Of a DNA stretch of 64,000 nt, positions 10,842-48,466 are shown piece by piece. The position numbers and the translations under genes are program-made. Each line of letters begins with the position of its first letter. The stretch's first letter is position 1. The DNA lies in the IMG/VR virus record IMGVR_UViG_3300046170_000378, positions 1-64,000 of that record, one strand, 5' to 3'. Below the pieces are notes generated by a model. It ran no database searches and had not been told where the DNA came from. It saw only the letters and a program-made list of their open reading frames with translations.

Positions 10842-12855
10842 ATGTCATTAGCAGCAGACGGTTACGAAAACGAAAAAGGAAGACGAGGTAGCAAGAAAAA
10901 GGCTACTCCGTTTTTAGATGAGTTCGGAGAAGATTTAACTCAATTAGCAGCGGAAGGCAAATTAGACCCCATTATCGGCAGAGATAAAGAGATCTATAGA
11001 ATTTGTCAAATCCTTGCACGTAGAAAGAAAAACAATCCTATTATTTTAGGAGACCCGGGCGTCGGTAAAACCGCAATCGTTGAAGCTATAGCTCAGCGCA
11101 TTGTGAATAAGAAAGTTGCACGTGTGCTTCTTAACAAAAGACTAATCTCTATCAACATGACAACCATTGTTGCAGGAACAAAGTATAGAGGAGAGTTTGA
11201 GGAGAGAATGAAAAATATAGTAGATGAATTAAAGGGTGCAGACAATGTAATTGTTTTTATCGACGAGATTCATACAATTGTTGGTGCAGGTGGAGTTAGC
11301 GGAGCATTAGACGCATCTAATATTCTCAAGCCAGCGCTAGCACGAGGACAAGTACAATGTATTGGTGCAACCACAACTGATGAGTACAGAGAAAACATTG
11401 AAGATGATGGCGCACTAACACGTAGATTCCAAGAAATCTTTATTGATGCTCCTTCGGTTCAAGACACCATTGAGATTCTAAATAGAATAAAAGGTAATTA
11501 TGAAGAGCATCACTCAGTGATATATGAAGACGATGCAGTTGAAGCTTGCGCCAAATTAAGTGAACGTTATATCAAACAACGTGAGCTACCAGACAAAGCG
11601 ATAGATCTTTTGGATGAGGCTGGTGCGAGAACACATTTACTAGAAGTTAAAATTCCAGCTAAAATTAAAAACCTTGAAAAAGAGTTAGAGATTGTTAAGC
11701 TAGAAAAGAAAATGGCAGTGGAAGAACAAGATTATGAAAAAGCTGCTAGTCACAGAGACGGTCAAATTTCATTAGAAAGTTTGATCCAAAAAGAAACTGA
11801 AAAATGGGAGTCTTCTCTAAAATCTAAAAAGAGAGCGGTAACATTTAATGATATTGCAGAAACGGTTTCAATGCAAACAGGTATTCCTATCAATAAGCTA
11901 GGTACTGATGATCTTAAGATGATCAAAAATATGGCTAAAGAAATTAAAGCGAATATCATTGGACAAGATGATGCAGTTGAGGCTTTAGCACAAGTAATTA
12001 AAAGATCAAGAACTGGAGTTGCTAGTCATAGTAAACCAAGTGGATCATTCATGTTTTTAGGACCAACTGGTGTCGGTAAAACAGAAACAGTAAAAGCGTT
12101 ATCTGAATACTTGTTCGGAGACTCTGACTCTATGATCAGAATTGACATGTCTGAATATATGGAAAAGTTTACAGTTAGTAGATTAACTGGAGCGCCTCCG
12201 GGATATGTTGGACACGAAGATGGTGGTCAGTTAACTGAAGCTGTGAGACGCAAGCCATATTCTGTAGTTCTATTCGACGAGATTGAGAAAGCTCATCCTG
12301 ACGTATTTAATACATTACTACAAGTGCTTGACGAAGGTAGATTAACAGACTCTAACGGGACGTACAGTAGATTTTACGAACACAGTAATTGTAATGACGT
12401 CAAACGTTGGTGCTAGAAAGGTATCTGACTTTGGAACTGGTATTGGATTTGCTAGTGAGTCTAATGTTGCCCAAGAGAAAGCCAAAAAAGAAGCAATCAT
12501 TAAAAAGGAATTAAAAAATAAATTTAGTCCTGAATTTTTGAATAGGCTTGATGATTTAATCTTATTTGATCAACTAAAACAAGAGCACGTAATTAAGATC
12601 GTTACTTTAGAGCTTAATAAGTTTATAGAAAGAATGGAAGATGAAGGTTACGCGTTTAAGTTTACAAACACAGCGAAAGAATTCTTAGCTAAAGAAGGTT
12701 ACGATCCAAAGTTCGGCGCAAGGCCAGTTAAGAGGGCTATTCAAAAATATGTAGAAGATTTAGTAGCTGATTTAATTTTAGACGGATTAAAAAAGTCAGA
12801 AAAAGCTATAACTATAACAAAAGATAAGTCAGAGGATAAACTAATTGTAAGATAG
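10842..12855 (+). CDS. clpC: ClpC-type Hsp100 ATPase lacking the N-domain (frameshift near 12358)
   Basis: [33 protein letters not shown]-like M-domain [35 protein letters not shown], ClpP-docking loop [14 protein letters not shown]. Confidence 0.9.
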
Positions 12856-12890
12856 TCATATAACCTTTATAAGGTTTAAAAACAATACAT

Positions 12891-13746
12891 ATGAATTTTT
12901 CAAATCAATTTATTGATACAATTATAGACATTGAATCAGATGGTGATGTATCACAACCAAGAGATCTTAAAGTAAAAGAATTACAATTTGGCCATATCGC
13001 TATAGATCCCACAAGACCGATAGCAGATTTTGAAGCAAGAGGTTTTAATTGGAAATACTTAGCAGGTGAAATGGCTTGGTATCTAAAAAAAGATAGAGAT
13101 GTAGATTACATTGGTCAATTCTCAGGATTTTGGTCTAATATAACAAACCCTAATACAAACGAAATCAATTCTAATTATGGTTCTTTAGTTTTTAATAAAG
13201 AACAATTTGGATGGGCAGTAGATTCATTACTTAAAGATAAAAATAGCCGACAAGCTATTATGTTCTTTAATCAGCCTAAATTTCAGTTTGAAGGCAATAA
13301 AGACTTTGTATGTACAATGTATGCTAATTTCTTTATTAGAAATAATAAGTTAAACATGAAAATACAAATGAGATCTAACGACATATTCTACGGTCTCACA
13401 TTTGATGCACCTTTCTTTTCATTCTTACACCAATCAGGTTTATCTAATTCTTAAAGATCAATATTCTGACCTAGAACTAGGTGTATATCACCACTTTGCA
13501 GACAATATTCATTTCTACGAAAGACACTTTGAATTAGCAGAAGAAATAAAGTCTAATAGAATATCTAGTGAAGGTCACACATTCGAGCTTAAAGATAAAT
13601 TTATTGATTACACCTCATCAGATGGTGTAAAGCTAACAAATGCAGCAACAGAATTTATAGCTAGAATAGATGACATGGTAACACGCGAACCTTTAGCAAA
13701 AAGACACGACTACAAACAAGTCCTAGAAGACTATTTTAAAATCTAA
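12891..13746 (+). CDS. Thymidylate-synthase-fold enzyme, probably a dCMP hydroxymethylase (frameshift near 13438)
   Basis: DKNSRQA, DFVCT (catalytic Cys), QMRSNDIFYGLTFD with Asp where ThyA has Asn, and NIHFYERH. Confidence 0.7.
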
Positions 13747-13762
13747 TATATAATATAAGAAT

Positions 13763-14089
13763 ATGATTCAAGAAATGAAAGAACCTGTAAAAATATACAT
13801 AGACCCGAGGTTGCTATTAAAAGGAGATTTAGATAAGGTTCTGATGAGTAAGTATGATGTATTCTATAGAAGAATGGTTGAATATGTGCTTAATGTCATA
13901 GAAGGTAAACCAGAATCAAAACTTCTAGCTGTTTTAATTGATGGAGAAGGTCTAGAATACGAAATGCAATTACCTGAATCTGGTTTTGTTAAATCTTTAA
14001 CAAAAGCTAACGAATATTTTTTAGAAATAGAAGAGTATGAAACATGTACTTTAATTAAAGACATGTTAAAAATAATAGAAAACAAATAA
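13763..14089 (+). CDS. Small protein with a C-terminal UVR-like motif
   Basis: YFLEIEEYETCTLIKD. Confidence 0.7.
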   Translation: MIQEMKEPVKIYIDPRLLLKGDLDKVLMSKYDVFYRRMVEYVLNVIEGKPESKLLAVLIDGEGLEYEMQLPESGFVKSLTKANEYFLEIEEYETCTLIKDMLKIIENK

Positions 14090-14139
14090 ACAGTTTTTAT
14101 ATTTACAATATAACTAGTAATAAAACAAATACACCATAC

Positions 14140-14814
14140 ATGGATTACGGAAAAGAATTTGAAAAATATGCGATGAGCGATCACGGTGTGAGCTCTATGA
14201 ATATGCACTATTTTAAAAATCAGGTAGATAACTCATTGACACCATATATTCTTGAAGAAAGAGAAATGAGAGTTACACAAATGGATATATTCTCAAGGTT
14301 AATGGCTGATAGGTTGTTGTGGGTTGCAGGACCAGTGAATGACAACATGTCTACTATTGTCCAAGCACAGTTAATGTTCCTTAGTAATACTTCTACAGAC
14401 GATATTACAATGCACATTGATTCTCCAGGTGGTTCAGTGAAGTCTGGGCTGTCTATGGTAGATGTAATGGATTACATTCCATGTGATATTAGAACAGTTA
14501 ATACAGGTATGGCAGCTTCAATGGGATCAGTTTTATTGGGAGCAGGCACTAAAGGTAAAAGATCTTCACTAAGACACTCGACAACAATGTTGCATCAATC
14601 TTCTGGTGGATTTAGTGGTAATATACAAGATGCTGAAGTTGATTGGGCAGAATGGAAAAAAGTTAATGAAGAATTATTTGTTTTACTTGGCTCCTACTGT
14701 GGAAAAACTGCAGCTAAAGTTAAGAAAGATGCAACACGTGATTTTTGGCTAAACGCGGAAGAAGCCAAGAAATATGGTATTATTGATGAAATCATTAAGC
14801 CTAAAACAAAATAA
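14140..14814 (+). CDS. clpP: ATP-dependent Clp protease proteolytic subunit
   Basis: MDIFSRLM, IDSPGGSV, GMAASMG (Ser), MLHQ (His), RDFWL (Asp); Flavobacterium-like N-terminus MDYGKEFEKYA. Confidence 0.95.
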   Translation: MDYGKEFEKYAMSDHGVSSMNMHYFKNQVDNSLTPYILEEREMRVTQMDIFSRLMADRLLWVAGPVNDNMSTIVQAQLMFLSNTSTDDITMHIDSPGGSVKSGLSMVDVMDYIPCDIRTVNTGMAASMGSVLLGAGTKGKRSSLRHSTTMLHQSSGGFSGNIQDAEVDWAEWKKVNEELFVLLGSYCGKTAAKVKKDATRDFWLNAEEAKKYGIIDEIIKPKTK

Positions 14815-14821
14815 AAACAAA

Positions 14822-15342: not shown

Positions 15343-15383
15343 ATATTTGACAACTAAGCATGACAAAATATGATAAATAATTC

Positions 15384-26813: not shown

Positions 26814-29800
26814 ATGCAACTAAGAATTAAGCAAATTTTAGATTTAATCAGTAGTAATCCCAGTAACGGCGATTACTTTTCATACAACTCTAATACTGGA
26901 CAATATGAAAATACTGCGGCTCCACTTGATGGGACCTCTGTAAAATATGCGACAACGTTTAATGGTCCACATGGAACGGATGAAAGTCGTGGTCCTGGTG
27001 AAGACTTGGGTAGTTTAACTGTAGAAGAAGGTTTATCATATATTGGAGGTGAACTTATTACAATTGTACCAGTCGTTAACCCTGAAAATATTCAAGTAGC
27101 AAGAGTAACCAGCTATAGCGGTACAACTTTGACAATTGAACATATCTCACACACAGGAACTCAATCGTATTCTGGTAGTGAAGATTGGAATATTAATTTA
27201 ACGGGTTTAAGTGGCACGTCTGGCACATCAGTAAAATATGCTACAGTATTTGACGCTCCTCATGGAACAGCTGAAAGCCGTGGTCCTAGTGAAGACTTAG
27301 GTTCTTTAACAATAGAAACAGGCTTATCATATATCGGCGGTGAATATATTACTATTTCACCAGTTGTTAGCCCTGAAAATATTCAAGTAGCAAGAGTAAC
27401 TAGTTACAATGCGACTACTGGTGTTATAACATTTGAACACATATCACACACAGGAACTCAATCATATTCAGGTAGTGAAGATTGGAATCTTAATCTAAGT
27501 GGTGAAAACGGTTCTTCGGGAACTTCTGGAACTTCAGGAACTGATGGCTCTTCAGGAACTGACGGAACTTCAGGAACTGATGGCTCTTCTGGTACAAATG
27601 GTACAGATGGATCAAGCGGTTCTTCAGGTACAAATGGTACAAATGGTTCTTCAGGTGTTGATGGTTCTTCAGGTACTGATGGTACTTCTGGTACAAACGG
27701 TACTGATGGATCAAGCGGTTCTTCTGGAACAAACGGTACAGATGGTTCTTCAGGAACTGATGGCACAAATGGTTCTTCTGGAACTAATGGTACTGATGGA
27801 TCAAGCGGTTCTTCAGGTATTGATGGTAGTCCAGGTTGGGGTATTCAAATGCAAGGCCAAGTTGCAACAGAAGATGATTTACCTGCTGACGATGATTCAA
27901 CACGCTTAGAAGATGGTTATGCTTATATAGTACAATCAGACGATTCTATATGGGTTTGGACTCAAGAAGATGGCTGGATTTCTGGTGGTTCTATTCAAGG
28001 GCCTTCGGGTTCTTCAGGTACTGACGGTACTAATGGAACTTCAGGTACAGATGGTTCTTCTGGCACAAATGGCACAAATGGTTCTTCTGGAACTAACGGA
28101 ACTTCTGGAACTAACGGAACTTCTGGAACTAATGGTACTGATGGATCAAGCGGTTCTTCTGGAACTGATGGAACTTCTGGTACAAATGGCTCTTCAGGTA
28201 CTGATGGCTCTTCTGGAACTGACGGAACAAATGGCTCTTCAGGTACTGATGGCTCTTCAGGTACTGATGGAACTTCAGGAACTGATGGAACTTCAGGTAC
28301 AAATGGTACAGATGGTTCGAGCGGTTCTTCTGGAACTGATGGAACTTCAGGAACAAATGGCTCTTCTGGTACTAATGGAACAAATGGATCAAGTGGTTCT
28401 TCTGGAACTGACGGAACTTCAGGTTCTAATGGATCAAGTGGTTCTTCAGGGTCGAGCGGTGTAAGTGCACAGCAATGTGACGGTTATTCAAGAATAACTT
28501 CAGGTAATTTATTAAGTCCTAATCCATTAGCAGAAGGAAATATTCAACTACTACAAAGCTATAGCGTACATACTACAACAGCAGCTAATGTTGGTTATAT
28601 AAGAATTGGAGAAAATACTCCAGGAACAATTTCGACCATTGCAGGCGGAGAACGTTTTATAAAAATAGAAAACATAGGAGATCCTACTGCATATACTTTA
28701 TTTAATATAAGTAACTACAACGGTGCCTACAAAATATGGTATATTAGTAACGCATTACAATATGGTGGCGGTGCAGACTTAAGTCAAGATGAATTTTGTG
28801 TTTCATCACATACACAATATCTACCGGTAGTAGACGAAGATGGTAGTGCTCCAAGCGAAAGAGGCGTTCCTAATACAAATCTTACATTTCTTTGGGACAA
28901 CGTAAGCGCAACTAGTATATCTTCTGGTGACATAAACATTGATGTAAATTTACAAAATGCAGTCGTAGGAGATCTATATCAATTTAATATTTCGGCTACT
29001 AACTCAAAGGGTACATCAGTGGCCACTGAATTACAGGCAATCAACAGTGTTAATAACACAATGGGTTCTGGATTCTTAACAATATATGATCAAAATTCGG
29101 ACAGTACAGCAACATTTATTGTTCCTTCTAGTCATTCGCAGACTTCAGCTGGATTAAACTTTAGAGATGCAGAGCTTGTTCAAATAAAAGGTCTTTGGGA
29201 AACTACAAAGGGCTTAGATTCTAATGGAAACGAAATATCTATAGATACTGAAGTATTGCTAGGATATGAGTTATTTGGAAACGATGGAACAAGCGGTACT
29301 AATGGTACTAATGGATCAAGCGGATCAAGTGGTTCTTCAGGTTCAAACGGTACAGATGGATCAAGCGGATCTTCAGGTTCGAATGGTTCGAGTGGAACGA
29401 GTGGATCTTCGGGTTCAAGTGGATCTTCAGGAACTGATGGAACTTCAGGAACTGATGGATCAAGCGGATCTTCAGGAACTGACGGAACTTCAGGAACTGA
29501 CGGAACTTCAGGAACAAATGGAACTTCAGGAACTGATGGATCAAGTGGATCTTCGGGTTCAAGTGGATCTTCGGGTTCAAGTGGATCAAGTGGATCTTCG
29601 GGATACGACGTTCCAACAGGTGCAACAGTCGGTGACTTACCAAATGGAGAATACGAAGGACAGATTGGTTTTACTGGAGAAGGTTTAGTTTACATTTGGA
29701 AAGGCGGAGCATGGTCTCCATATTTAGACATGAACGGAACTAGTGGAACAACTGGAACTTCAGGTTCTGATGGATCAAGCGGTTCTTCAGGAACTGATGG

Positions 29801-31828: not shown

Positions 31829-34800
31829 ATGCCTAGAAGATCACTAAAAAGTATTGCCAATATGGTTGCAGCTATGAAGTTTGGCAGAAATGCAACAAAT
31901 ATAGCTAACGCAAAAAACGCAAAAATAGGTTTAAATAATCCTGGTTTTAAAGATGCGCATAAACCAAGTGCTTATTCTGCTTCGCAAGAATACACTGATT
32001 TATACACACTTGGCCCAATAATAGACGACATCTTAGATGCAATTCATGCTCTTGAAGATGAATCTGCCGGAATAGGTGAGTATTTACATGATCACTTTGG
32101 ATCCGAAGAAGATAAGATTCAAATACCTGCAGATTTAAGAGTAGAAATAGGAGGCGCTTTTGTTCAAGCTCTATATGAAAACTCAGACAATATAATTATA
32201 GGTGCAGACGTCTTTTTGCCTAATTCAGGTATAGTTAATTTTCAAATAACTGGAAATAATACATTACAAGTAGGTGGAGTACCAATCATTAACGCAAGTG
32301 GAGAATGGATTGGACCTTCTACGGGACTTAAGGGCCAGAAAGGTCAGAGAGGTGTAGCTGGAACTTCAGGAACTGATGGTACATCAGGATCTTCAGGTTC
32401 AAGTGGATCTTCGGGTACTGACGGATCTTCAGGTACTAATGGAACAAATGGATCTTCAGGTACTGACGGATCTTCAGGTACTAATGGAACTAGTGGTGTT
32501 GACGGAGCTAAAGGTCAAAAAGGACAGACAGGCCAAAAAGGACAAAAGGGTCAAACCGGTGCGGCAGGAACTAGTGGTACTAATGGAACCGATGGAACTA
32601 GCGGAATTAAAGGCCAAAAGGGTCAAAAAGGACAAACAGGTTCAACAGGTGCCAAGGGTAACACAGGTAACTTCGGTGGAGCTAGTTTTGATTACACGCA
32701 TGATTCTTCTACAAATGCAATGTCTGACCCAGGAAGAGGTAGAGTTAGAACAAACAGCAATACAATGTCGAGCGTTAGCTCATTAGCAATAGACGCTGAA
32801 GACGATTTTGGTAATGATATTAGTAATTTCTTAACTACTGTAGATGCATCAACATCTGCAGTTAAAGGTTTTGTAAGATTTGCAGAAAAGACAAATACTA
32901 CTTCATTTGTAACATATGCAATATATGATTTAATAAACAGATCAGGTTGGTGGGAATTAAGTGTCGATATGACTGCAACATCTGCACCAACTATTCCATT
33001 TGCAAACGGAGCAGACATTATAATGTCCTTTGTTGTAACTGGTAATGTGGGTGATAAAGGTCAAAAAGGAGCGTCAGGTGTTGATGGAATCTCTGGAACA
33101 TCTGGTCAAGACGGAACATCTGGAACTGATGGTACATCAGGATCTAGTGGATCAAGCGGTTCTTCTGGAACCGATGGATCTTCAGGTACTAATGGTACTA
33201 ATGGATCTTCAGGTTCATCTGGTTCAAGCGGAACTTCAGGTTCATCTGGTTCAAGCGGTACTAATGGTACTAATGGATCTTCGGGTTCTTCAGGATCTAG
33301 TGGATCTTCAGGTTCTTCAGGATCTAGTGGTTATCAAGGCGCAAAAAGTGGTGAATATGGAGATCCAAATAGTGTAAATCTACTTGGAGAATTTAACGGC
33401 CAATTATACTTTGATGGAAACGGTTTTGTTTGGACATGGATCTCAGCAGAAGGCGCTTGGATAAAGGTAAATAATTTAACTGGTCAAAAAGGACAAAAAG
33501 GGCAAACTGGAGCCCAAGGTATTAAAGGTGTTACTGGACCAAAAGGTAATGCTGGTTCTTCTGGAACCGATGGATCAAGTGGATCAAGTGGTTCTTCAGG
33601 ATCGAGCGGAAGAAATGGAACTAGTGGAGTTAACGGTGCTAAAGGACAAACTGGGGCACAAGGTGCTCAAGGTGCACAAGGACCACAGGGTGCTCAAGGT
33701 GTACAAGGTATTAAAGGTCAGAAAGGTCAAAAAGGTCAAACAGGAGCTCAAGGTCCTCAGGGACAAAAAGGTCAAACAGGTTCTCAAGGTTTTCAAGGAC
33801 ATGGTTATACAAAAGCTGCCTTAGATGGTGTAGATTTAGTATTAACACACACGTTAGATGGAGACATTAATGTCGGTAGAGTTTACGGAAATCAAGGTGC
33901 TCAAGGTGCTCAAGGTCAGAAAGGTCAGAAAGGTCAAACTGGTGGTCAAGGTGGTCAAGGTGCTCAAGGTATTAAAGGTGTTACTGGGCCGACCGGACCG
34001 CAAGGTGCTACTGGACCACAGGGTATTAAAGGTGTTACTGGGCCGACCGGACCGCAAGGTGCTACTGGACCACAGGGTATTAAAGGTGCTACTGGTGCTA
34101 AAGGTGTTACTGGACCTAAAGGAAACACCGGTGCTCAAGGACCTACCGGACCACAGGGACCTCAAGGTCATGGCGTTAAAACAGCCTACTTATCAGGCAC
34201 TGATTTAATTATAGATCATACATTAGAAGGTTTAATAAATGTCGGTAGAGTTTATGGAAATCAAGGTGCTAAAGGTCAGAAAGGACAAACCGGTGGCCAA
34301 GGTGGCCAAGGTGCACAAGGTATTAAAGGTGTTACTGGACCGACCGGACCTCAAGGGCCAACAGGTGCACAAGGTGCACAAGGTATAAAAGGTCAGAAAG
34401 GTCAGAAAGGTCAAACTGGAAATACTGGACCTAAAGGAAGTACAGGTGCTCAAGGACCACAGGGTCATGGCTATACAAGAGCCACTCTAGTTGGTGCAAA
34501 TTTAGTATTAACACATACACTAGACGGAGATCTTGATATTGGTAGAGTTTACGGAAATCAAGGTGCTCAAGGACCAACAGGTGCACAAGGTGCTCAAGGA
34601 CCAACAGGTGCTGGCGGTGCTAAGGGACAAAAAGGTCAAAAAGGACAAACCGGTGCTCAAGGTGGTGGAGGTGCTCAAGGAGCTAAAGGTGCAACTGGGC
34701 CAACCGGACCAAAGGGTGCTATTGGTGTTACAGGTGCTCAAGGTCCAACTGGAGCTAAGGGTCAAAAAGGACAAACTGGTGCTCAAGGTGGACAAGGTGC

Positions 34801-35059
34801 TCAAGGTATTAAAGGTGCAACTGGGCCGACAGGACCAAAGGGTTCTACCGGGCCAACTGGGCCGCAAGGTGCAACCGGACCACAAGGTGCAACCGGACCA
34901 ACACTAAACGTTTCCAATAATTCTAACAATAGAATTATCACGGCAACTGGTGGATCTACAGTAAATGCTGAGTCTGCATTAACATTCGATGGAACATATT
35001 TAAATATTAACGGAGCTGGAATATCACACGATGGCACCGTAATGAGATTTACAGTATAA
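31829..35059 (+). CDS. Collagen-like fibre protein (1076 aa), possibly the proximal long-tail-fibre (gp34-position) subunit
   Basis: Long GQK/GAQ/GPT/GIK triplet runs interrupted by repeated HTL(D/E)G..VGRVYG modules; directly precedes the gp35-like gene. Confidence 0.75.
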
Positions 35060-37100: not shown

Positions 37101-38351
37101 ATGGCAGATTTAAAACAAGGAACAACAGTAGGAGGTAACGAAGTATTACATACCGGAAACTTTATTACAGCCAATTACCCAGGATTTAAAGGTTCTACTG
37201 GAGCCCAAGGTGCTAAAGGTGCTACTGGACCCCAAGGTGCTACAGGACCTAAAGGTTCTACTGGAAACACTGGAGCCCAAGGTGCTAAAGGTGCTACTGG
37301 CCCTCAAGGTGGTACAGGACCACAGGGGATTAAAGGTCAAAAAGGTCAAACTGGTGCTACAGGTGCTATTGGACCGAAGGGTACTACTGGAAATACTGGG
37401 GCACAAGGTGCTAAAGGTGCTACTGGACCGACTGGTGCTACCGGCCCTCAAGGAGCACAAGGTGCTACCGGCCCTCAAGGTGGTGGAGGTGCAACTGGTG
37501 CCAAAGGTCAAAAAGGTCAAAAGGGTGCAACGGGTGCTCAAGGAGCTCAAGGTGTAATTGGACCAAAAGGAAACGTAGGAAGTACAGGACCAACGGGTGC
37601 TCAAGGTGCTAAAGGTCAGAAAGGACAAACAGGTGCTCAAGGTGGCGGTGGTGCTAAAGGTGCTACTGGACCCACTGGACCTACCGGACCTAAAGGAAGT
37701 ACAGGCGCTCAAGGGCCACAAGGTCATGGCGTTAAAACAGCCTACTTATCAGGTGTTGATTTAATTATAGACCACACATTAGATGGTTTAATAAATGTTG
37801 GTAGAGTTTACGGTGCTCAAGGTGCTAAAGGTCAGAAAGGACAAACAGGTGCTCAAGGTGGCGGTGGTGCCACTGGAGCTAAAGGTCAGAAAGGACAAAC
37901 AGGTGCCACTGGACCACAAGGTGCTCAAGGTGGTGGAGGTGCTCAAGGCGCTAAAGGCCAGAAAGGTGCACCAGGTGCTACCGGACCGATCGGACCAGAA
38001 GGTAAAACTGGAGCCCAAGGTGCAACAGGTGCTCAAGGTGGAATTGGACCAAAAGGTAATACAGGAAATACCGGTGCCGCTGGAGCTAAAGGTCAAAAAG
38101 GTGCACCAGGTGCTACCGGACCGACTGGACCTAAAGGAAATACTGGTGCTACTGGACCTACCGGTGCTACTGGACCTACCGGTGCTACTGGACCTGCTGG
38201 TCAAGATGGCGGTGGAGGATGTATTGCCCTATTCGTAGACGGTCGAGATTCAAACGCATGTCTTGATTCTGTAAATGTCGATACTAGAGCTGGCGCTATG
38301 CAACTGGTATTTGATAACGGCGATGCTTTCACAGCAATGTTACTAAAATAA
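37101..38351 (+). CDS. Collagen-like fibre protein with a T4 gp36-like N-terminus
   Basis: [21 protein letters not shown], then roughly 100 Gly-X-Y triplets rich in GAK/GQK/GPK/GPT. Confidence 0.75.
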
Positions 38352-39057: not shown

Positions 39058-40092
39058 ATGAGGATTTTGTTTTATGCAGGCTATCAAAGAGTCCCATTAA
39101 ATCAAACAATAAACACTGGAGGAGGGACAGAAATAGCTTTAGTTTCTATAGCCGAAGAAATGGTAAAATTTGGATATGAGGTAATAATCTCAGGTGAAGT
39201 AGAAAAATTAGGTAAAATAAATGGAGTTACTTGGCTGCCTACCCATGAGATTCACCAAACATATGATTATTTTGATGTTATAATAAGTGCAAGCTATATT
39301 CACTTTTTGCATGAATTTAAAAACTATACTTCTGCAAAAAAAGTATTTTGGGCACACAACACACACCACCATGCATGGTATAATGGGTTTGAACTTACTA
39401 GTGCAGATGAGTTAGTCAAAGAAGTAGACGCTACGGTGTGTTTAACAAATTGGCACGCAGACATATGGTCAAAAAAATATAACATCGATAGAGATTCTAT
39501 AAAAATTATAGGAAATGGAATTAACACCAATAGCTTTATTGGAAATCCACCTAAAATTAAAAATAAATTTATATGGTCATCAGAGCCAGAAAGAGGTTTG
39601 ATGTCTTTATTGCACAATTGGCCTAAAATAAAAATGATTAATAATAGTGCATCATTGGACATATATTCACCTGAGTATGGTCTAGATCAATTAGAGCATA
39701 TGATGCCTATTATTAATATGTTAGAAGATGTAAACGTTATTGGAAATAAAAGTCAATCAGAACTGCATGATGCTATGTTAAGAGCAGAATATTGGTGTTA
39801 TATTACAGATTATGAAGAAACATATTGTATCACCGCTTTAGAAATGCAATATGCTAAAGTAATACCTATTGCCACCAAAGCAGCTGCACTTAATGAAACT
39901 ATAAAATCGGGAATTATATGTGACTCTACAGATGAAACAAATTGGAATAGCGCTATATTATCTATAGGTAGAGCGGGTTCACAAATAAAAGAAAAGGTCA
40001 TTGAGTCTAATTATAATTGGGCAAAGTGTCAAACATGGAACCAAAGATCATATGATTGGAAAAACCTAATAGAGAAATTAACACATGAGTAA
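39058..40092 (+). CDS. GT4-like (GT-B) glycosyltransferase
   Basis: GGGTEIAL, IIGNGI, FIWSSEPERGL, EETYCITALE. Confidence 0.8.
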   Translation: MRILFYAGYQRVPLNQTINTGGGTEIALVSIAEEMVKFGYEVIISGEVEKLGKINGVTWLPTHEIHQTYDYFDVIISASYIHFLHEFKNYTSAKKVFWAHNTHHHAWYNGFELTSADELVKEVDATVCLTNWHADIWSKKYNIDRDSIKIIGNGINTNSFIGNPPKIKNKFIWSSEPERGLMSLLHNWPKIKMINNSASLDIYSPEYGLDQLEHMMPIINMLEDVNVIGNKSQSELHDAMLRAEYWCYITDYEETYCITALEMQYAKVIPIATKAAALNETIKSGIICDSTDETNWNSAILSIGRAGSQIKEKVIESNYNWAKCQTWNQRSYDWKNLIEKLTHE

Positions 40093-41380
40093 ATTAAATT
40101 TTGATAAAATCTATATAATATCACTGGACCATAGTCAAAGCGGATATGATAAGATAGCTAAAAAATTAAATGACTTAGGCCTAACTAAATCTGTGCCGTA
40201 TGAGATAATAAATGCACATGATGGAAATACAGATAAGTTGCCAGAAAATTATCACGTTTATGATAAGTGGCAATTATCAGGAAGTAACAATAAATGGTGG
40301 TCTCAAGATGTAACTGCCTCAGAAATAGGATGTGCAATAAGCCATATCAAATGTTGGCAAAAAATAATTAAAGATAATGTTAGATCAGCTTTAATTTTAG
40401 AAGAAGACTTTTTACCGCAAAAACCAATATCTGATTTAAATCAACCTGAGCTAATTTATGATTTAGCGTACTTAGGTAAGTGGTTATTGCCTGAAAAAGA
40501 AGATACTAAAATACCAAATGATGCACAGTGGTTTTATTCAGGTGCGTCTTATAATACACATGCATATATTATTACTAATTCATGTGCTCTTAAATTCCTA
40601 GACTATAACTTACATAAAAATATAATTCCAGTAGATGAGTTTATTATAGCAACATACAGCGATCACCCTAGAAAAGACGTGAGAGAATTGTATGCAAATA
40701 AAAACATAGTAACTATTACACCTAGTGAAGATTATATTGAACAAGAAACTAACACTATGAAAAATACAACATACTTTGAAATATTAGATGATTCTAATTG
40801 GGAAGAATGGAAATCAAAATATGTCAATCACACATTAGCTAAAGGCGAATATGATCTAATGCTAGATGATTTAGGCAACAACGTATACGAATTTCAATTA
40901 TTTACAGAAAAATTCTGTAAAGAAGCTGTTGCACTTGCAGAAGCCAAAGATAATTGGACAATAGACAGACATGAATTTTATCCAACAAACGATGTTCTTT
41001 TACAGGACATTGATTTACAAAAAATATATCATAGAGTATTAAAGGAAGTTGTATATCCTCTTTGTATCCACGTATGGACTCTAGAGGGTGCAGGATGGAA
41101 AGATATGTTTAGTGAAAACTTTATGGCTAGATATACAACAGACAGACAATCACACCTATCATTGCACCACGATTTTAGTCATGTAACTATGGTGGTTAAA
41201 CTTAACGATGAGTTTGAGGGTGGAGGAACTTGGTTTCCAAAATACAACTTGCTATCAAATCCTAAAAAGATAGGAACAGCAACACTGCATCCAGGAATGG
41301 TAACTCACTTACACGGTGCTAGACCAATAGATTCTGGAAAAAGATACATTATAGTATCGTTTATGAGAAAGGAAAAGTAA
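40085..41380 (+). CDS. Fusion of a GT25/COLGALT-like glycosyltransferase and a PLOD-like lysyl hydroxylase domain
   Basis: N-half: KIYIISL, EIGCAISHIKCW, ALILEED, SYNTHAYII, IIPVDEFI...HP. C-half: FTEKFC, LHHDFS (HxD), FEGGGTWF, LHPGMVTHLHGA, GKRYIIVSF. Confidence 0.8.
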   Translation: MSKLNFDKIYIISLDHSQSGYDKIAKKLNDLGLTKSVPYEIINAHDGNTDKLPENYHVYDKWQLSGSNNKWWSQDVTASEIGCAISHIKCWQKIIKDNVRSALILEEDFLPQKPISDLNQPELIYDLAYLGKWLLPEKEDTKIPNDAQWFYSGASYNTHAYIITNSCALKFLDYNLHKNIIPVDEFIIATYSDHPRKDVRELYANKNIVTITPSEDYIEQETNTMKNTTYFEILDDSNWEEWKSKYVNHTLAKGEYDLMLDDLGNNVYEFQLFTEKFCKEAVALAEAKDNWTIDRHEFYPTNDVLLQDIDLQKIYHRVLKEVVYPLCIHVWTLEGAGWKDMFSENFMARYTTDRQSHLSLHHDFSHVTMVVKLNDEFEGGGTWFPKYNLLSNPKKIGTATLHPGMVTHLHGARPIDSGKRYIIVSFMRKEK

Positions 41381-44963: not shown

Positions 44964-45338
44964 ATGTATTTAACAAATTTATCAAACTTAGGTAACGGTG
45001 CATTGGAAGATGCATTCGACAATTTTTTTAACTTTCCAGTTGCGAGAGAAACATGGGACACATTAGGAATTACAGGACCTCAATATAAGACTGCAAAAGA
45101 CATGCTAATGGTTAGTCTTCCAGGATTTAGTAAAAAAGATATTAATCTAGAAATCAAAGGTCAAGTAATTACCATTAGTGCTGAAGACAAAGACAATTCT
45201 TTTGCTAAAGGCTTTACCAAAAAATTTAGATTTCCTGAAGAAATCGACATGGACTCTATTACGGCTAAAATGTCAGACGGTATCTTAACGCTTAACTTTA
45301 AGCCATCGAATGACACTAAGAAAATAAATATAAAATAA
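44964..45338 (+). CDS. Small heat-shock protein (Hsp20)
   Basis: LPGFSKKDINLE, FTKKFRFPEEID...ITAKMSDGILTL. Confidence 0.85.
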   Translation: MYLTNLSNLGNGALEDAFDNFFNFPVARETWDTLGITGPQYKTAKDMLMVSLPGFSKKDINLEIKGQVITISAEDKDNSFAKGFTKKFRFPEEIDMDSITAKMSDGILTLNFKPSNDTKKINIK

Positions 45339-45399
45339 TTTAGCCAGGATTTTTTTATGTCAATTATTTGTGGTATATTAGTACTATAATAATCAAAAT

Positions 45400-45711
45400 A
45401 TGGAAGAAGATAACTTTGACTTTGACGACTTTTTAGAAAATTCTAATAACGAGTTTAATCACAAGCTAGAAAAATATAAGGAAGCCATGATTTCGGCGGC
45501 GATCGATCAGAACTATCAAAACATCGTGAACCAAGGTATAAGCGATTGGCATCTTAGAATGATGGAGCCTACTGAATTAAACGAATTGATGCAAACGTTT
45601 AACGTGATGATCAAACATTATGAAGACCTAGAAGAGTTTGAAAAATGTGCAGAGTTGGCAAAACATAGAAAAATCATAGATCAAAGCATGTCGCTAAGGC
45701 AAGATATATAA
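45400..45711 (+). CDS. Small protein with a C-terminal UVR-like motif
   Basis: HYEDLEEFEKCAELAK. Confidence 0.7.
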   Translation: MEEDNFDFDDFLENSNNEFNHKLEKYKEAMISAAIDQNYQNIVNQGISDWHLRMMEPTELNELMQTFNVMIKHYEDLEEFEKCAELAKHRKIIDQSMSLRQDI

Positions 45712-45755
45712 TCTATAACGTGTTAGTGCTATCTAACTAACGCGGGCCCCCGATT

Positions 45756-45785
45756 AAACCCAGTCAGAAACGACTGGGTTTTTTA
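45756..45785 (+). terminator. Intrinsic terminator
   Basis: AAACCCAGTC-AGAAAC-GACTGGGTTT followed by a T run. Confidence 0.8.
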
Positions 45786-45798
45786 TGATATATAATGT

Positions 45799-46143
45799 AT
45801 GAAACACCTTAAATCTCTAAAAGAATTTTTAAATGAAGAGTATGTTATGCAGCATTTGGAAAAAGAGTATAATATTATTCTTGATATATGGGACAATGGA
45901 GAGTATTTAGAACTGGGTAAAATAGAAGTTCCTAAAAATCTTAGATCTTTAGGCGTCGGCACCAAAGTCATGAAAAGAATTGTGAAAATGGCAGACGAAC
46001 AAAACAAAGATATTAGGCTTACGCCTTCTAAAGATTTTGGTGCTACCTCGGTATCTAGACTTGAAAAATTCTATAGAACTTTTGGTTTTGTAAAGAATAA
46101 AGATTTAAAATATAAGGACACTATGGTCCGATATAGTAAGTAA
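45799..46143 (+). CDS. GNAT acetyltransferase with a capsid-targeting-like N-terminus
   Basis: IEVPKNLRSLGVGTKVM (acetyl-CoA motif), LEKFYRTFGF; starts MKHLKSLKEFLNE. Confidence 0.75.
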   Translation: MKHLKSLKEFLNEEYVMQHLEKEYNIILDIWDNGEYLELGKIEVPKNLRSLGVGTKVMKRIVKMADEQNKDIRLTPSKDFGATSVSRLEKFYRTFGFVKNKDLKYKDTMVRYSK

Positions 46144-46147
46144 CAAT

Positions 46148-46675
46148 ATGAAATATCTAAAATTATTTGAACAATTTCTTTTAGAAAAAGAACCAGAGTG
46201 GCAAGACGCCGATTGGCCTGATGCTGAAGGTAGATTTAGAGATTTATCTATTAAGGATTTAGCAGCATGGCTAATTAAAACCAGAAAGAAAGATCTAAAA
46301 GCAATTAGTGGATCATTGACGCAACAGATAGTCTTTAACAGAAATGAAGATCCTGAATATGCTGAAAAAATGGAAAAGACTAGACAGGAAGTTTATAAAC
46401 AATTAGATAGACAAGATCTTATGGAAGATTTTGAAACAGATAATCCAGAACTGGACAGAATTAGAAAATTTGCAGGATCTATACAAGATTTACACACATG
46501 GATGAGAAGAGCGATGCAAGATCAGGGTCGTGATGGTGAAACAAATCCGTATAAAGACACTATAATGGTAAATGGTCCACAAACTGGCGAATTAGATCAG
46601 TCTTTACCATATCAAGATTTTCAAAATGGTAAATCAGACCTAGTAAAGAATAGACATGGAAGAAAAGACAGCTAA
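46148..46675 (+). CDS. Hypothetical protein with a capsid-targeting-like N-terminus
   Basis: Starts MKYLKLFEQFLLE. Confidence 0.7.
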   Translation: MKYLKLFEQFLLEKEPEWQDADWPDAEGRFRDLSIKDLAAWLIKTRKKDLKAISGSLTQQIVFNRNEDPEYAEKMEKTRQEVYKQLDRQDLMEDFETDNPELDRIRKFAGSIQDLHTWMRRAMQDQGRDGETNPYKDTIMVNGPQTGELDQSLPYQDFQNGKSDLVKNRHGRKDS

Positions 46676-46838
46676 AGAAATTGCAATTCAACTAAAAAGA
46701 ATTGCCGATGCTCTTGAATCTAAGAGTAAACTAGAGATGCAAAGAGAAAAACGTAAAATCAAGTTAGAAAAACTTGAAGAACGTAAATTAAGATCTGACC
46801 TTCGTATTAACGAAAATTCTAGAAATGAATCATTATGA
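46656..46838 (+). CDS. Small coiled-coil hypothetical protein
   Basis: IAIQLKRIADALE; overlaps both neighbours. Confidence 0.55.
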   Translation: MEEKTAKEIAIQLKRIADALESKSKLEMQREKRKIKLEKLEERKLRSDLRINENSRNESL

Positions 46839-47634
46839 TACATTAGGTGTAGACAGAACTGCAACACAAGAAGAAATTAAGAAGGCTTATAGAAAGCTAG
46901 CCAAAGAATATCATCCAGACAGATCTGGCGGTGATGATTCAAAATTCAAAAAAGTTGCTGAAGCATATGATGTTATCGGTGATGAATCCAAAAGAAGCAT
47001 GTACGACATGCAAGGCTCAGGTGATAATTTCTTTGGGCAATTTCAAGATTCAAATGTAAATTTAAGCGACATCTTTGATCAGATGTTTGGCGGTGCACAA
47101 CAACCACAGCAGCGCGGTCTAGATCTTAGAATGGAAATGCACGTTAGTTTTATGGAAGCCATGAATGGCTTAGATAAACAATTTACTATTAACGGTACTT
47201 TAGTTAATGTGAGTTTTAAACCTGGTTTAAAAACTGGCCAGAAATTTAGATTACACGGTAAGGGTCAACCCCATCCGTACAATTCTAATCTTCCAAACGG
47301 AGATCTAGTAATTCATACACACGTTGAAGTAAATCCTAATTTTATTTTACAAGGCGATGATATTTGGATAGAACATAATCTGCCATGGTACGATATTATG
47401 AGTGGCTGTAAAATCGAAGTATGGTCTCCTGATGGACTGCTAGCAATAAATGTACCTAAAGGCACAAAACCTGGAAAAACACTACGAATAAAAGATAAAG
47501 GCTACCCAATATATGGCAAAAATAGACGAGGTGCTCTTTTATGTAGAATAAACGCAGTGTACCCAGAATTAAATGAAGAATCTCTTGAATATATAAATAA
47601 AATAAAACAAGTACAGGAGAGTAATAATGAATAA
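46825..47634 (+). CDS. dnaJ: DnaJ/CbpA-type co-chaperone (no Zn finger)
   Basis: J-domain YDTLGV...IKKAYRKLAKEYHPDR; C-terminal domain with LRIKDKGYP. Confidence 0.9.
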   Translation: MNHYDTLGVDRTATQEEIKKAYRKLAKEYHPDRSGGDDSKFKKVAEAYDVIGDESKRSMYDMQGSGDNFFGQFQDSNVNLSDIFDQMFGGAQQPQQRGLDLRMEMHVSFMEAMNGLDKQFTINGTLVNVSFKPGLKTGQKFRLHGKGQPHPYNSNLPNGDLVIHTHVEVNPNFILQGDDIWIEHNLPWYDIMSGCKIEVWSPDGLLAINVPKGTKPGKTLRIKDKGYPIYGKNRRGALLCRINAVYPELNEESLEYINKIKQVQESNNE

Positions 47635-47908
47635 TTCATTTTTTGATAAGAATAGAAACGAAGAAGGCGACATGTGGTATAACATTGTCAATAATATTAT
47701 GTTATTGAATTCTGAGGCTTTCTTTAGAGCTGTATTTGATGCAATGCAAAATCATCCAACTTATGTAATATTATCTGATTTTGAAAGTGATAGAAAGATT
47801 TATATAATGGATCAAATGTTAGAACATTATGAAAAAAAGGAAGACTTTGAAAAGTGTAAAGTTATTTTTGAAATTAAAAAGCAAATAGAAATAGAAAATA
47901 GATGCTAA
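47627..47908 (+). CDS. Small protein with a C-terminal UVR-like motif
   Basis: HYEKKEDFEKCKVIFE. Confidence 0.7.
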   Translation: MNNSFFDKNRNEEGDMWYNIVNNIMLLNSEAFFRAVFDAMQNHPTYVILSDFESDRKIYIMDQMLEHYEKKEDFEKCKVIFEIKKQIEIENRC

Positions 47909-48090
47909 AAATAGAAGTTAATAAAGGGGGAATAGAAAGAGCCCTAAAAAACTATAAATCCAAGGTAATTAGAACTAAGCAATTAAAAAAACTTAGAGAT
48001 AGAAAACAATTTACCAAGCCTAGCGAAACAAGACGCAAGCAAATAGCTAAGGCTAAATACGTCCAATCTAAGAAGGATTCAAACGAATAA
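47902..48090 (+). CDS. rpsU: 30S ribosomal protein bS21
   Basis: IERALKNYKSKV.RTKQLKKLRDRKQFTKPSETRR...KAKY. Confidence 0.85.
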   Translation: MLKIEVNKGGIERALKNYKSKVIRTKQLKKLRDRKQFTKPSETRRKQIAKAKYVQSKKDSNE

Positions 48091-48193
48091 AGTAATATCC
48101 TAATATTTTAGGTATCAAATTATTCTTCATTACCATTTCACACAAAATATATACCTAGAGTGTTAGTCATACGACACACTTAATAAAAAACAA

Positions 48194-48466
48194 TTGGACA
48201 AGGAGATGAGCGATTTTATTTCTAATTCTGACAAAGATAGCTTGATGAGAGCATCATACTATCAAATAACTAGAAACTTTACAAAGACTGTAAATAGGTT
48301 CATCGCGTTTAAGGATAGTGATCATATTGTAGAAATTCCACATGGTATTGGCCAAAGAAGCCACTTCATAGATCTTATGATCAAATACTTTGAATCTTTA
48401 GAAGAGTACGAAAAATGTAATAAATTACTTAAGTTAAAGGAACTTGTCATGATGGCAGGTGATTAA
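48194..48466 (+). CDS. Small protein with a C-terminal UVR-like motif
   Basis: YFESLEEYEKCNKLLK. Confidence 0.7.
   Translation: MDKEMSDFISNSDKDSLMRASYYQITRNFTKTVNRFIAFKDSDHIVEIPHGIGQRSHFIDLMIKYFESLEEYEKCNKLLKLKELVMMAGD

What the first reader, a model, noticed from the sequence alone, without database searches (positions are those of the whole stretch)
10842..48466. Phage ClpCP protease with four UVR-motif proteins as candidate adaptors
Seen: ClpC lacks the N-domain but keeps the UVR M-domain (EQDYEKAA) and the IGF ClpP-docking loop, and clpP is nearby. Four otherwise unrelated ~90-110-aa proteins end in a similar motif: 13763 YFLEIEEYETC (between clpC and clpP), 45400 HYEDLEEFEKC, 47627 HYEKKEDFEKC (after dnaJ) and 48194 YFESLEEYEKC. 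Established: UVR coiled coils dimerise with each other, the ClpC M-domain takes part in adaptor control, and McsA carries a UVR motif. Inference: interchangeable adaptors aim a phage protease at chosen host or phage proteins, alongside Hsp20 and DnaJ.
Basis: partly seen in the sequence, partly recalled or inferred. Interest (0 to 1): 0.6.

Follow-up and report, generated by a model that had tools for sequence, protein, structure and literature searches.

The report
Phage ClpCP and EEYEKC-hairpin small proteins
A 212-kb marine phage that probably infects Bacteroidota carries its own ClpC/ClpP protease, with ClpC missing its usual N-terminal control domain, plus four copies of a large, undescribed, virus-only family of small proteins ending in an invariant EEYEKC helical hairpin; their link to the protease is possible but only weakly supported.

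Summary
The window encodes a ClpC without an N-domain. It has two AAA+ rings, a short M-domain that passes Pfam UVR, and a GIGF ClpP loop. A true ClpP, Hsp20, DnaJ and PhoH are also present. The motif E[ED][FY]ExC occurs exactly four times in the 212-kb genome (0.07 expected), each near the C-terminus of a 90-108-aa protein.

Three corrections:
- The clpC frame is split by one extra base. Three near-identical seawater assemblies lack that base, so it is an assembly error.
- The four proteins are related to each other. Profile comparison and AlphaFold show one family.
- The hairpin resembles UVR in shape and turn sequence, but it fails Pfam UVR and does not match the phage's own M-domain.

The family is virus-only and large (1341 representative clusters). 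It has no Pfam or PHROG model.

The adaptor idea gets only weak support. The U1-ClpC co-fold scored 0.38 against a best control of 0.02. Against the idea, the family occurs in phages without ClpC or ClpP, including a complete cultured Flavobacterium phage genome. Three of the four copies overlap dnaJ, a phage bS21 gene or phoH rather than sitting near clpC.

Most likely these are modular small binding proteins that share one docking hairpin. The shared partner is unidentified; a ClpC-type M-domain is the leading candidate.

The parts
10842..12855 (+). clpC, N-domain-less (about 670 aa if read through). One spurious extra base near 12357-12360 splits it into ORFs 10842-12416 and 12394-12855.
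   Evidence: Three metagenome assemblies omit the base.
11694..11780 (+). UVR motif at the tip of the ClpC M-domain (aa 285-313, containing QDYEKAA). Y298 aligns with S. aureus ClpC F436.
   Evidence: Pfam PF02151, 22.9 bits. Alignment to 6em8. Y298, E299, A301, R305 and D306 are invariant in 14 phage ClpCs.
12442..12450 (+). IGF tripeptide of the ClpP-docking loop (GIGF).
   Evidence: Translation of the ORF at 12394.
12891..13746 (+). Thymidylate-synthase-like gene lying between clpC and U1. It is split by a spurious extra base at 13437.
   Evidence: Pfam Thymidylat_synt 8e-12. Three metagenome assemblies omit the base.
13763..14089 (+). U1, a 108-aa EEYEKC-hairpin family member (motif EEYETC), between the TS gene and clpP.
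   Evidence: AlphaFold pLDDT 80.
14140..14814 (+). clpP (224 aa).
   Evidence: Pfam 2.6e-56. NCBIfam PRK14514 2.6e-69, though its 233 bits are under that model's 361-bit cut-off. At least 78% identical in more than 599 IMG/VR contigs.
44964..45338 (+). Hsp20 small heat-shock protein.
   Evidence: Pfam HSP20 8e-12.
45400..45711 (+). U2, a 103-aa family member (EEFEKC).
46825..47634 (+). DnaJ (J domain plus C-terminal domain).
   Evidence: Pfam DnaJ 1.7e-23 and DnaJ_C 7e-31.
47627..47908 (+). U3, a 93-aa family member (EDFEKC). Its start overlaps the dnaJ stop by 8 nt.
   Evidence: A DnaJ gene followed by an overlapping family member is also seen in a distant relative (L166).
47902..48090 (+). 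Phage-encoded ribosomal protein bS21 (62 aa). Its start overlaps the U3 stop by 7 nt.
   Evidence: Pfam Ribosomal_S21 3e-11.
48194..48466 (+). U4, a 90-aa family member (EEYEKC). It is the best conserved of the four. The true start is probably the ATG at 48206. Its end overlaps the phoH start by 8 nt.
   Evidence: AlphaFold pLDDT 84.5. The overlap of a family member with phoH is kept in distant relatives L169, L170 and L172.
48459..49169 (+). PhoH-like ATPase.
   Evidence: Pfam PhoH 4.7e-64.

Best explanation
Two real features share this window, but nothing shown here makes them one system.

(1) A working phage protease. ClpC of Bacteroidota type has lost its N-domain throughout this phage clade. 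It keeps the M-domain, with an aromatic residue at the tip, and the ClpP-docking loop. A canonical ClpP accompanies it.

(2) Four paralogues of a large, virus-only, unannotated small-protein family. Each has a variable N-terminal half (a long helix plus a beta-hairpin) and an invariant C-terminal alpha-hairpin with the pattern h..hh.YFE..EEYEKC..h..h.

The most likely mode of action is inferred, not shown. The invariant hairpin would be a shared docking surface for one common partner, and the variable half would give each paralogue its own second contact. That would make them small modular adaptors or regulators used in host takeover.

The family also occurs in phages that encode none of ClpC, ClpP, DnaJ or PhoH. 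The common partner is therefore more likely a host protein of the Bacteroidota hosts than the phage ClpC specifically. In this clade the copies have settled next to proteostasis and translation genes (clpP, hsp20, dnaJ-bS21, phoH).
For: Family is real and under selection:
- The motif occurs 4 times against 0.07 expected.
- E and C are invariant across 71 modules and 137 representatives.
- An exhaustive profile search finds 1341 representative clusters at E<=1e-3. Nearly all are 40-150 aa with the module at the C-terminus.

One family with a variable front half:
- hhalign on full-length proteins gives 95-99% probability, but the N-terminal halves alone match only weakly.
- AlphaFold gives U1 and U4 the same topology.

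Virus-only and unannotated:
- No Pfam, NCBIfam or PHROG family matches.
- Atlas neighbours are all viral hypothetical proteins.

Independent of any one phage partner. In 19 records of other lineages that carry the module:
- ClpC is present in 2, ClpP in 1, PhoH in 6 and DnaJ in 1.
- Records that are 97% and 85% complete lack all four.
- The complete Flavobacterium phage immuto genome has a member (gene 144) but no ClpC or ClpP.

Hosts are probably Bacteroidota:
- The nearest cellular ClpCs (57-60% identity) are nearly all from Bacteroidota and carry 158-250 extra N-terminal residues.
- A second module-bearing lineage has a large terminase 63% identical to that of the Flavobacterium phage.

ClpC integrity: relatives' genes are intact, and three metagenome assemblies lack the extra base.
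Against: - No binding partner has been shown for any member.
- An invariant hairpin could instead serve folding or self-association.
- The tight, conserved overlaps with phoH and dnaJ suggest partners specific to each neighbour rather than one common hub.
- The U1-ClpC co-fold, though weak, points to the phage ClpC.
- The fold searches gave only noise-level matches (best Z 6.4), so the structure gives no functional anchor.
Confidence: 0.45

Rival explanations
1. The hairpin imitates the tip of a ClpC M-domain and binds the M-domain of ClpC, either the phage's N-domain-less copy or the host's ClpC. This would break the repressive M-domain to M-domain contacts, switch the protease on, and let the variable half deliver chosen substrates.
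For: - EEYEKC aligns in register with the QDYEKAA tip of the phage M-domain. Its Tyr falls on ClpC Y298, which corresponds to S. aureus F436.
- Published work shows that S. aureus ClpC without its N-domain stays proteolytically inactive unless the M-domain contacts are also broken (F436A). With both changes it is highly active (PMC12583610). A natural N-domain-less ClpC with an aromatic tip should therefore need such an unlocking factor.
- U1 lies between clpC and clpP in most relatives.
- Co-fold of U1 with ClpC 1-350: score 0.38, best of 3 controls 0.02, verdict 'weak support'. The mark was reached by 58 of 80 solved complexes and 2 of 110 mismatched pairs. At 0.60 or under it was reached by only 7 of those 80 and by both of the mismatches that passed. 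The runs agree in at least 43% of contacts, and the partner's pLDDT is at least 74.
- A few relatives give sub-threshold Pfam UVR hits (best E 0.0074). An Atlas neighbour cluster has UVR in 39% of its members.
- Megaphage LR756502 has both ClpC and module proteins.
- The inferred hosts (Bacteroidota) have a ClpC with an M-domain. Phages without their own ClpC could therefore target the host's copy.
Against: - The similarity to UVR is not significant (P 0.019, probability 2.5%).
- The module profile misses the phage's own ClpC.
- Pfam UVR fails for all four window proteins and for all 71 modules.
- The RD pair of UVR is not conserved in the module.
- The family is common in phages without ClpC or ClpP.
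- In the sub-clade where clpC and clpP lie apart or directly adjacent, no module gene is near either.
- The complex tool returned no interface, so contact with the M-domain in particular is not shown.
Confidence: 0.25
2. Each paralogue is a dedicated small subunit or regulator of the product of its neighbouring gene: U4 with PhoH, U3 with DnaJ and/or bS21, U1 with ClpP, U2 with Hsp20. The shared hairpin is then only the family's structural core.
For: - Start and stop codons overlap by 7-8 nt in the chain dnaJ/U3/bS21 and at U4/phoH, which suggests translational coupling.
- A module gene overlapping the start of phoH is kept in relatives whose ClpC is only 53-57% identical and whose upstream neighbour has changed to the terminase (L169, L170, L172).
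- A DnaJ gene followed by an overlapping module gene is also kept (L166).
- PhoH is the commonest co-occurring gene in other lineages (6 of 19).
Against: - Most records with the family lack PhoH, DnaJ and ClpP.
- The large ~145-aa subfamily sits among unrelated hypothetical genes.
- It is hard to see why four different partners would demand the same invariant EEYEKC turn.
Confidence: 0.15
3. The hairpin is a self-association or metal- or redox-dependent dimerisation element. The single invariant Cys and the acidic cluster would sit at a dimer interface. The proteins would then have unrelated functions, for example as small regulators.
For: - Cys is invariant in 71 of 71 modules and in the aligned representatives, where a packing role alone would tolerate Ala or Ser.
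- The UvrB-type UVR hairpins that it resembles dimerise (established knowledge, not tested here).
Against:
- The profile used to collect the relatives favours Cys, so part of the invariance is selection bias.
Confidence: 0.1

Closest known systems
ClpC of Firmicutes and Bacteroidota (class I Hsp100 with a short M-domain), e.g. S. aureus ClpC (6em8) and B. subtilis ClpC (3j3s)
   Same: - Two AAA+ modules.
- A short M-domain that passes Pfam UVR.
- A ClpP-docking IGF-type loop.
- E 1.5e-185 to S. aureus ClpC over residues 149-646.
- 57-60% identity to Bacteroidota ClpC.
   Different: The whole N-domain (about 150-250 aa) is missing in every phage copy examined. That domain is where MecA, phospho-arginine substrates and cyclic peptides act, and it stabilises the resting state (PMC12583610).
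Engineered N-domain deletion of S. aureus ClpC (Jenne et al. 2025, PMC12583610)
   Same: The domain make-up is the same as in the natural phage protein.
   Different: The laboratory construct is proteolytically silent unless the M-domain tip is also mutated (F436A). The phage protein keeps an aromatic residue (Y298) at that position. How it is activated is unknown.
UVR motif (Pfam PF02151) of UvrB/UvrC, the ClpC M-domain and McsA
   Same: - Both are alpha-helical hairpins of about 35-40 residues.
- Both have an acidic-aromatic-acidic turn followed by a small residue: EEYEKC here, (E/Q)DYEKAA in ClpC.
- The alignment falls in register.
- A few relatives give sub-threshold Pfam UVR hits.
   Different: - No family member reaches the Pfam threshold.
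- The UVR RD pair is absent.
- An invariant Cys replaces Ala.
- The profile-profile match is not significant, and the module profile does not find the phage's own UVR.
ClpC and ClpA adaptors (MecA, McsB/McsA, ClpS; phage-encoded ClpS noted by Iyer et al. 2021, PMC7824862)
   Same: Small proteins of about 100 aa encoded with, or acting on, Clp ATPases. Their logic is modular: one docking part plus one specificity part.
   Different: - No sequence or fold similarity to MecA, McsB or ClpS was detected.
- The known adaptors dock mainly on the N-domain, which is missing here.
- Binding is unproven.
Bacteroidetes phages encoding bS21, chaperones, Clp protease and PhoH (Chen et al. 2022, PMC9723584)
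   Same: The inferred host phylum and the gene repertoire match: bS21, Hsp20, chaperone ATPase, Clp protease and PhoH.
   Different: In those phages bS21 lies on the opposite strand within the structural module. Here it lies in the chain dnaJ-U3-bS21-U4-phoH. In the passages read, that paper does not describe the EEYEKC family or the loss of the N-domain.

Membership tests
ClpC (Hsp100/Clp class I unfoldase that docks on ClpP) | Two AAA+ modules with Walker motifs and a D2-small domain. | tested here: met
   Pfam AAA, AAA_lid_9, AAA_2 and ClpB_D2-small. E 1.5e-185 to S. aureus ClpC.
ClpC (Hsp100/Clp class I unfoldase that docks on ClpP) | A short coiled-coil M-domain carrying a UVR motif. | tested here: met
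   PF02151 scores 22.9 bits against a 21.5 cut-off at aa 285-313. The alignment to ClpC is one continuous stretch, whereas alignments to ClpB break into two.
ClpC (Hsp100/Clp class I unfoldase that docks on ClpP) | An IGF-type ClpP-docking loop. | tested here: met
   GIGF at aa 16-19 of the ORF at 12394. The same pattern was used to pick out the 59 relatives' ClpC ORFs.
ClpC (Hsp100/Clp class I unfoldase that docks on ClpP) | An N-terminal Clp_N repeat domain. | tested here: not met
   The protein starts at the position equivalent to residue 149 of S. aureus ClpC. All 59 relatives' ClpC ORFs are 656-675 aa. Cellular Bacteroidota copies have 158-250 more residues.
ClpC (Hsp100/Clp class I unfoldase that docks on ClpP) | An uninterrupted reading frame. 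| tested here: met
   The frame is broken in this assembly. Contigs of three seawater metagenomes that are otherwise identical omit one base at 12357/12360, and the relatives' genes are intact.
ClpP (S14 peptidase) | A full-length CLP_protease domain, scoring better against ClpP models than against ClpP-related prohead protease models. | tested here: met
   Pfam 2.6e-56 over profile positions 5-181 of 182. NCBIfam ClpP models score 1e-69 to 1e-54, against 4.5e-19 for the head-maturation model. The Ser, His and Asp triad motifs are visible in the translation. All NCBIfam scores are below those models' own strict cut-offs.
UVR motif (PF02151), applied to the four small proteins | A score above the Pfam gathering threshold. 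| tested here: not met
   Hits in 0 of 4 window proteins and 0 of 71 modules at the E limits used (1 and 10). 3 of 137 representatives hit at E<1, best 0.0074, all under 21.5 bits.
UVR motif (PF02151), applied to the four small proteins | Profile-level similarity to a bona fide UVR, here the phage ClpC M-domain. | tested here: inconclusive
   The local hhalign alignment is in register, but with P 0.019 and probability 2.5%. hmmsearch --max with the module profile does not hit ClpC at E<=10.
UVR motif (PF02151), applied to the four small proteins | A helix-turn-helix hairpin of about 35 residues. | tested here: met
   The AlphaFold models show H72-88 with H92-106 in U1 and H54-68 with H72-87 in U4, with pLDDT around 90 in this part.
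ClpC adaptor proteins (a functional class) | Physical binding to ClpC. | tested here: inconclusive
   Co-fold of U1 with ClpC 1-350: score 0.38, best control 0.02, verdict 'weak support', no interface reported.
ClpC adaptor proteins (a functional class) | Presence tied to the presence of the phage ClpC. | tested here: not met
   17 of 19 module-bearing records of other lineages lack ClpC. The complete Flavobacterium phage immuto genome has a member but no ClpC or ClpP. A tie to host ClpC was not tested.
ClpC adaptor proteins (a functional class) | Stimulation of ClpC ATPase activity or substrate delivery. | not testable with these tools
   This needs biochemical assays.
TPR-type repeat | A match to a TPR family model. 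| tested here: not met
   No TPR family appears among the listed Pfam matches for 71 modules and 137 representatives. The only recurring match is a sub-threshold one to the helical DHR-2 lobe A.

The most novel reading that the evidence does not exclude
The EEYEKC-hairpin proteins are a viral family of M-domain-tip mimics. Their hairpin caps the coiled-coil tip of a ClpC-type unfoldase, either the phage's own N-domain-less ClpC or the host's ClpC. This releases the unfoldase from its self-inhibited resting state, and the variable half feeds it selected host or phage proteins. Phages of Bacteroidota would thereby reprogramme an AAA+ protease with interchangeable small adaptors.
Probability: 0.2. 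Interest if true: 0.8.

Novelty: new variant of a known kind. Interest (0 to 1): 0.55.

Why it matters
- Clp genes in large phages have been listed in surveys, but how a phage-encoded ClpC/ClpP is controlled is unknown.
- This abundant marine and freshwater clade (ClpP at least 78% identical in more than 599 viral contigs) carries a ClpC that has naturally lost the domain through which all known adaptors, phospho-arginine tags and antibiotic peptides act. It is a natural experiment on ClpC regulation.
- Recent biochemistry predicts that such a protein needs a factor acting on the M-domain.
- Separately, the EEYEKC-hairpin family is one of the larger unannotated phage protein families (1341 clusters at 50% identity). 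It is multi-copy per genome, has an invariant Cys and Glu, and has a member in a cultured Flavobacterium phage. Its partner can therefore be found experimentally.

Tried and rejected
- Pfam, NCBIfam and PHROG scans of the four proteins and of longer relatives gave no family.
- A profile of the module searched against PDB sequences gave one chance-level hit, at E 0.72.
- Foldseek of U1 against the PDB gave nothing below E 1.
- VIA-align of U4 against 48,161 chains gave a best Z of 6.4, which is within noise for helical proteins. BAG three-helix bundles appear at Z about 5.5, but I do not rely on them.
- tblastn of U1, U3, U4 and a 146-aa relative against 50,697 GenBank phage records gave no match. 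Only the profile search found the member in Flavobacterium phage immuto.
- The search for related loci with U2 found no relative.
- Contigs carrying the longer relatives P0078 and P0080 were too short to give context.
- Conserved neighbours of the ~145-aa subfamily have no informative annotation.
- I considered and rejected reading the clpC frameshift as programmed or as a pseudogene. The same assembly has at least three such breaks within 3.5 kb, and independent assemblies lack the two that I tested.
- I considered a eukaryotic giant virus because of the collagen repeats, GT25 and DUF5824. I rejected it because a baseplate wedge protein and T4-type terminase relatives are present.
- The complex prediction was tried only for U1 with ClpC. 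Its result is 'weak support', not a finding of binding.

Full report
**What the window is.** The window is the first 64 kb of a single 212,342-bp virus contig with 34.6% G+C. Almost all genes lie on the + strand. It encodes a baseplate wedge protein (phrog_219), collagen-like fibre proteins and glycosyltransferases. It is therefore a large tailed phage. No GenBank phage record is close to it. IMG/VR, however, holds hundreds of relatives from marine and freshwater samples. ClpP is at least 78% identical in more than 599 contigs, and U4 has 72 related loci. Near-identical DNA is present in at least 14 seawater metagenome runs.

**The protease.**
- ORF 10842-12416 plus ORF 12394-12855 together make a ClpC. 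Pfam finds AAA, AAA_lid_9, UVR (aa 285-313, 22.9 bits against a 21.5 cut-off), AAA_2 and ClpB_D2-small.
- The best solved relatives are S. aureus and B. subtilis ClpC (E 1e-185). The alignment is continuous through the short M-domain and starts at their residue 149, so the N-domain is absent.
- The second ORF carries GIGF, the ClpP-docking loop.
- The two ORFs are separated by one extra base in a G run near 12357-12360. Shifting by one base there restores the conserved AAA+ sequence.
- All 59 relatives' ClpC ORFs examined are single ORFs of 656-675 aa, and all lack the N-domain.
- Contigs from three seawater metagenomes, otherwise identical to the window over 1.5-2.3 kb, omit exactly one base at 12357/12360 and one at 13437, in the thymidylate synthase gene.
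- A third split gene of the same kind (RNaseH_like, 10332-10788) lies just upstream.
- The breaks are therefore errors of this assembly, and the phage has an intact ClpC without an N-domain.
- The nearest cellular ClpCs (57-60% identity) are almost all from Bacteroidota, and they carry 158-250 extra N-terminal residues. The phage gene thus looks like a Bacteroidota ClpC that lost its N-domain. That is an inference, and it also suggests the host phylum.
- ClpP (14140-14814) is a full-length ClpP. It scores far better against ClpP models than against ClpP-related prohead protease models.

**The four small proteins.**
- E[ED][FY]ExC occurs four times in all six-frame ORFs of the genome, against 0.07 expected. 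Each occurrence lies near the C-terminus of a 90-108-aa ORF: U1 at 13763, U2 at 45400, U3 at 47627 and U4 at 48194.
- In 72 related loci the orthologues keep the motif almost letter for letter.
- An alignment of 71 non-redundant C-terminal modules has an invariant Glu and an invariant Cys. Its profile finds only the four U ORFs in this genome.
- The four are related to each other. Profiles of the four orthologue groups match at 95-99% probability, mostly through the last 40 residues, with weak signal further upstream.
- AlphaFold gives U1 (pLDDT 80) and U4 (pLDDT 84.5) the same topology: long helix, beta-hairpin, helix, helix. The EEYEKC sequence sits at the turn between the last two helices.
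- An exhaustive profile search of 1.84 billion representative proteins finds 1341 clusters at E<=1e-3. Nearly all are 40-150 aa with the module at the C-terminus.
- Every source calls these proteins hypothetical. Atlas neighbours, both by language-model features and by shape, are all viral. No Pfam, NCBIfam or PHROG model covers the family.

**Is the module a UVR motif?**
- In shape and turn chemistry it resembles one. It is an alpha-hairpin whose turn, EEYEKC, lines up in register with QDYEKAA of the phage M-domain.
- Statistically it does not qualify. Pfam UVR matches none of the four proteins and none of the 71 modules. It matches only 3 of 137 representatives, all below threshold, with a best E of 0.0074.
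- hhalign gives P 0.019 and probability 2.5%.
- The module profile does not find the UVR of the phage's own ClpC.
- I therefore call it UVR-like and do not file it as a UVR domain.

**Is it tied to ClpC?** In favour:
- U1 lies between clpC and clpP, after the thymidylate synthase gene, in most relatives.
- Every member of this clade that I checked has both ClpC and 2-3 module proteins.
- Megaphage LR756502 has both as well.
- The one complex job, U1 against ClpC residues 1-350 with my own alignments, gave 0.38, against a best of three controls of 0.02. The verdict was 'weak support'.
- That mark was reached by 58 of 80 solved complexes and 2 of 110 mismatched pairs. At 0.60 or under it was reached by only 7 of the 80 and by both mismatches that passed. 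The runs agree in at least 43% of contacts, and the partner's pLDDT is at least 74. No interface was reported.

Against:
- A motif scan of IMG/VR returned mostly loci with no other similarity to this genome, including a large ~145-aa subfamily.
- In 19 such records, ClpC is present in 2, ClpP in 1, PhoH in 6 and DnaJ in 1. Records that are 97% and 85% complete have none of the four.
- One of these lineages has a large terminase 63% identical to that of the cultured Flavobacterium phage vB_FspM_immuto.
- The complete 160-kb genome of that phage has a family member (gene 144, ending in EMYEKC) but no ClpC and no ClpP.
- It is not met for host ClpC. The inferred hosts are Bacteroidota, which have a ClpC with an M-domain.

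**Context of the other three copies.**
- U3 starts 8 nt before the dnaJ stop.
- A phage ribosomal protein bS21 gene (Pfam 3e-11) starts 7 nt before the U3 stop.
- U4 ends 8 nt after the phoH start.
- The overlap of a module gene with phoH persists in distant relatives where the upstream gene is now the terminase. A DnaJ gene followed by an overlapping module gene also persists.
- This suggests translational coupling to those genes, and it is the basis of rival 2.

**Mechanism.**
- Shown here: a conserved fold, an invariant hairpin, variable front halves, several copies per genome, and independence from any single phage-encoded partner.
- Inferred: the hairpin is a common docking surface and the front half gives specificity.
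- The most interesting candidate for the shared partner is a ClpC-type M-domain. Jenne et al. (PMC12583610) showed that S. aureus ClpC without its N-domain remains proteolytically silent unless the contacts between M-domain tips are also abolished (F436A). With both changes it is as active on an SsrA-tagged substrate as adaptor-activated wild type.
- The phage ClpC keeps an aromatic residue (Y298, invariant in 14 copies) at that tip. It should therefore still need something that engages the M-domain. A hairpin that presents the same acidic-aromatic turn is a plausible candidate.
- This remains an inference resting on a weak co-fold score and a non-significant alignment. I give it about 0.2-0.25.

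**Novelty.**
- Clp protease genes, chaperones, Hsp20, PhoH and bS21 in Bacteroidetes and jumbo phages have been reported (PMC9723584 and PMC7824862).
- Clade-wide loss of the ClpC N-domain and the EEYEKC-hairpin family are not covered by any library I searched, nor by the passages of those papers that I read.
- I rate the finding a new variant of a known kind, with moderate interest.

Noticed in passing
window 47902-48090 (+): A 62-aa phage-encoded ribosomal protein bS21 (Pfam Ribosomal_S21 3e-11). It overlaps the U3 stop and sits in the chain dnaJ-U3-bS21-U4-phoH. This differs from the published Bacteroidetes bS21 phages, where the gene lies on the opposite strand within the structural module.
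   Followed up: partly
window 10332-10788, 12357-12360 and 13437: Three genes within 3.5 kb (RNaseH_like, clpC and thymidylate synthase) are each split by a one-base shift. Independent metagenome assemblies lack the extra base at the two sites tested. The assembly therefore carries indel errors, and other short or split ORFs in this genome should be read with care.
   Followed up: partly
window 26814-31802, 31829-35059, 37101-38351 and 39058-41380: Three large collagen-triple-helix repeat proteins, one with an S74 intramolecular chaperone domain, lie next to GT25, GT4 and GT1 glycosyltransferases. These are probably glycosylated collagen-like fibres.
   Followed up: no
window 9671-10327 (+): A LOG/SLOG-family protein (Pfam Lysine_decarbox 1.5e-36) lies just upstream of clpC. 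It is conserved at 62-93% identity in many relatives.
   Followed up: no
window 56186-60199 (+): A 1337-aa protein whose only Pfam match is DUF5824.
   Followed up: no
L181 3906-4277 (-) and 2590-3909 (-), megaphage LR756502: A 123-aa module protein (ending in EKYEKC) overlaps the start of a 439-aa P-loop ATPase. This is another case of a family member coupled to an ATPase gene.
   Followed up: no
L391 1931-2449 (MW353177.1 74430-74948): Gene 144 (QQO92300.1, hypothetical) of the cultured Flavobacterium phage vB_FspM_immuto_13-6C is a family member ending in EMYEKC. This offers a laboratory system for finding the partner.
   Followed up: partly
alignment A6 (representatives): One of the 137 representative family members also matches Pfam Bac_DNA_binding (HU/IHF, 2.6e-10). 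This may be a fusion of the module to a DNA-binding domain. I did not identify which protein it is.
   Followed up: no
window 11748-13867: Contigs from a marine metatranscriptome run cover parts of clpC, the thymidylate synthase gene and the start of U1. One piece, 13738-13867, has no differences from the window. This is compatible with expression, but DNA carry-over is not excluded.
   Followed up: partly
L307 and L308 (genome contigs): The two best 'cellular' ClpC matches lie on short contigs (3.5 and 8.2 kb) of metagenome-assembled genomes, one of them labelled Limnohabitans. Both are full-length, with an N-domain. The binning of such short contigs may be unreliable.
   Followed up: no
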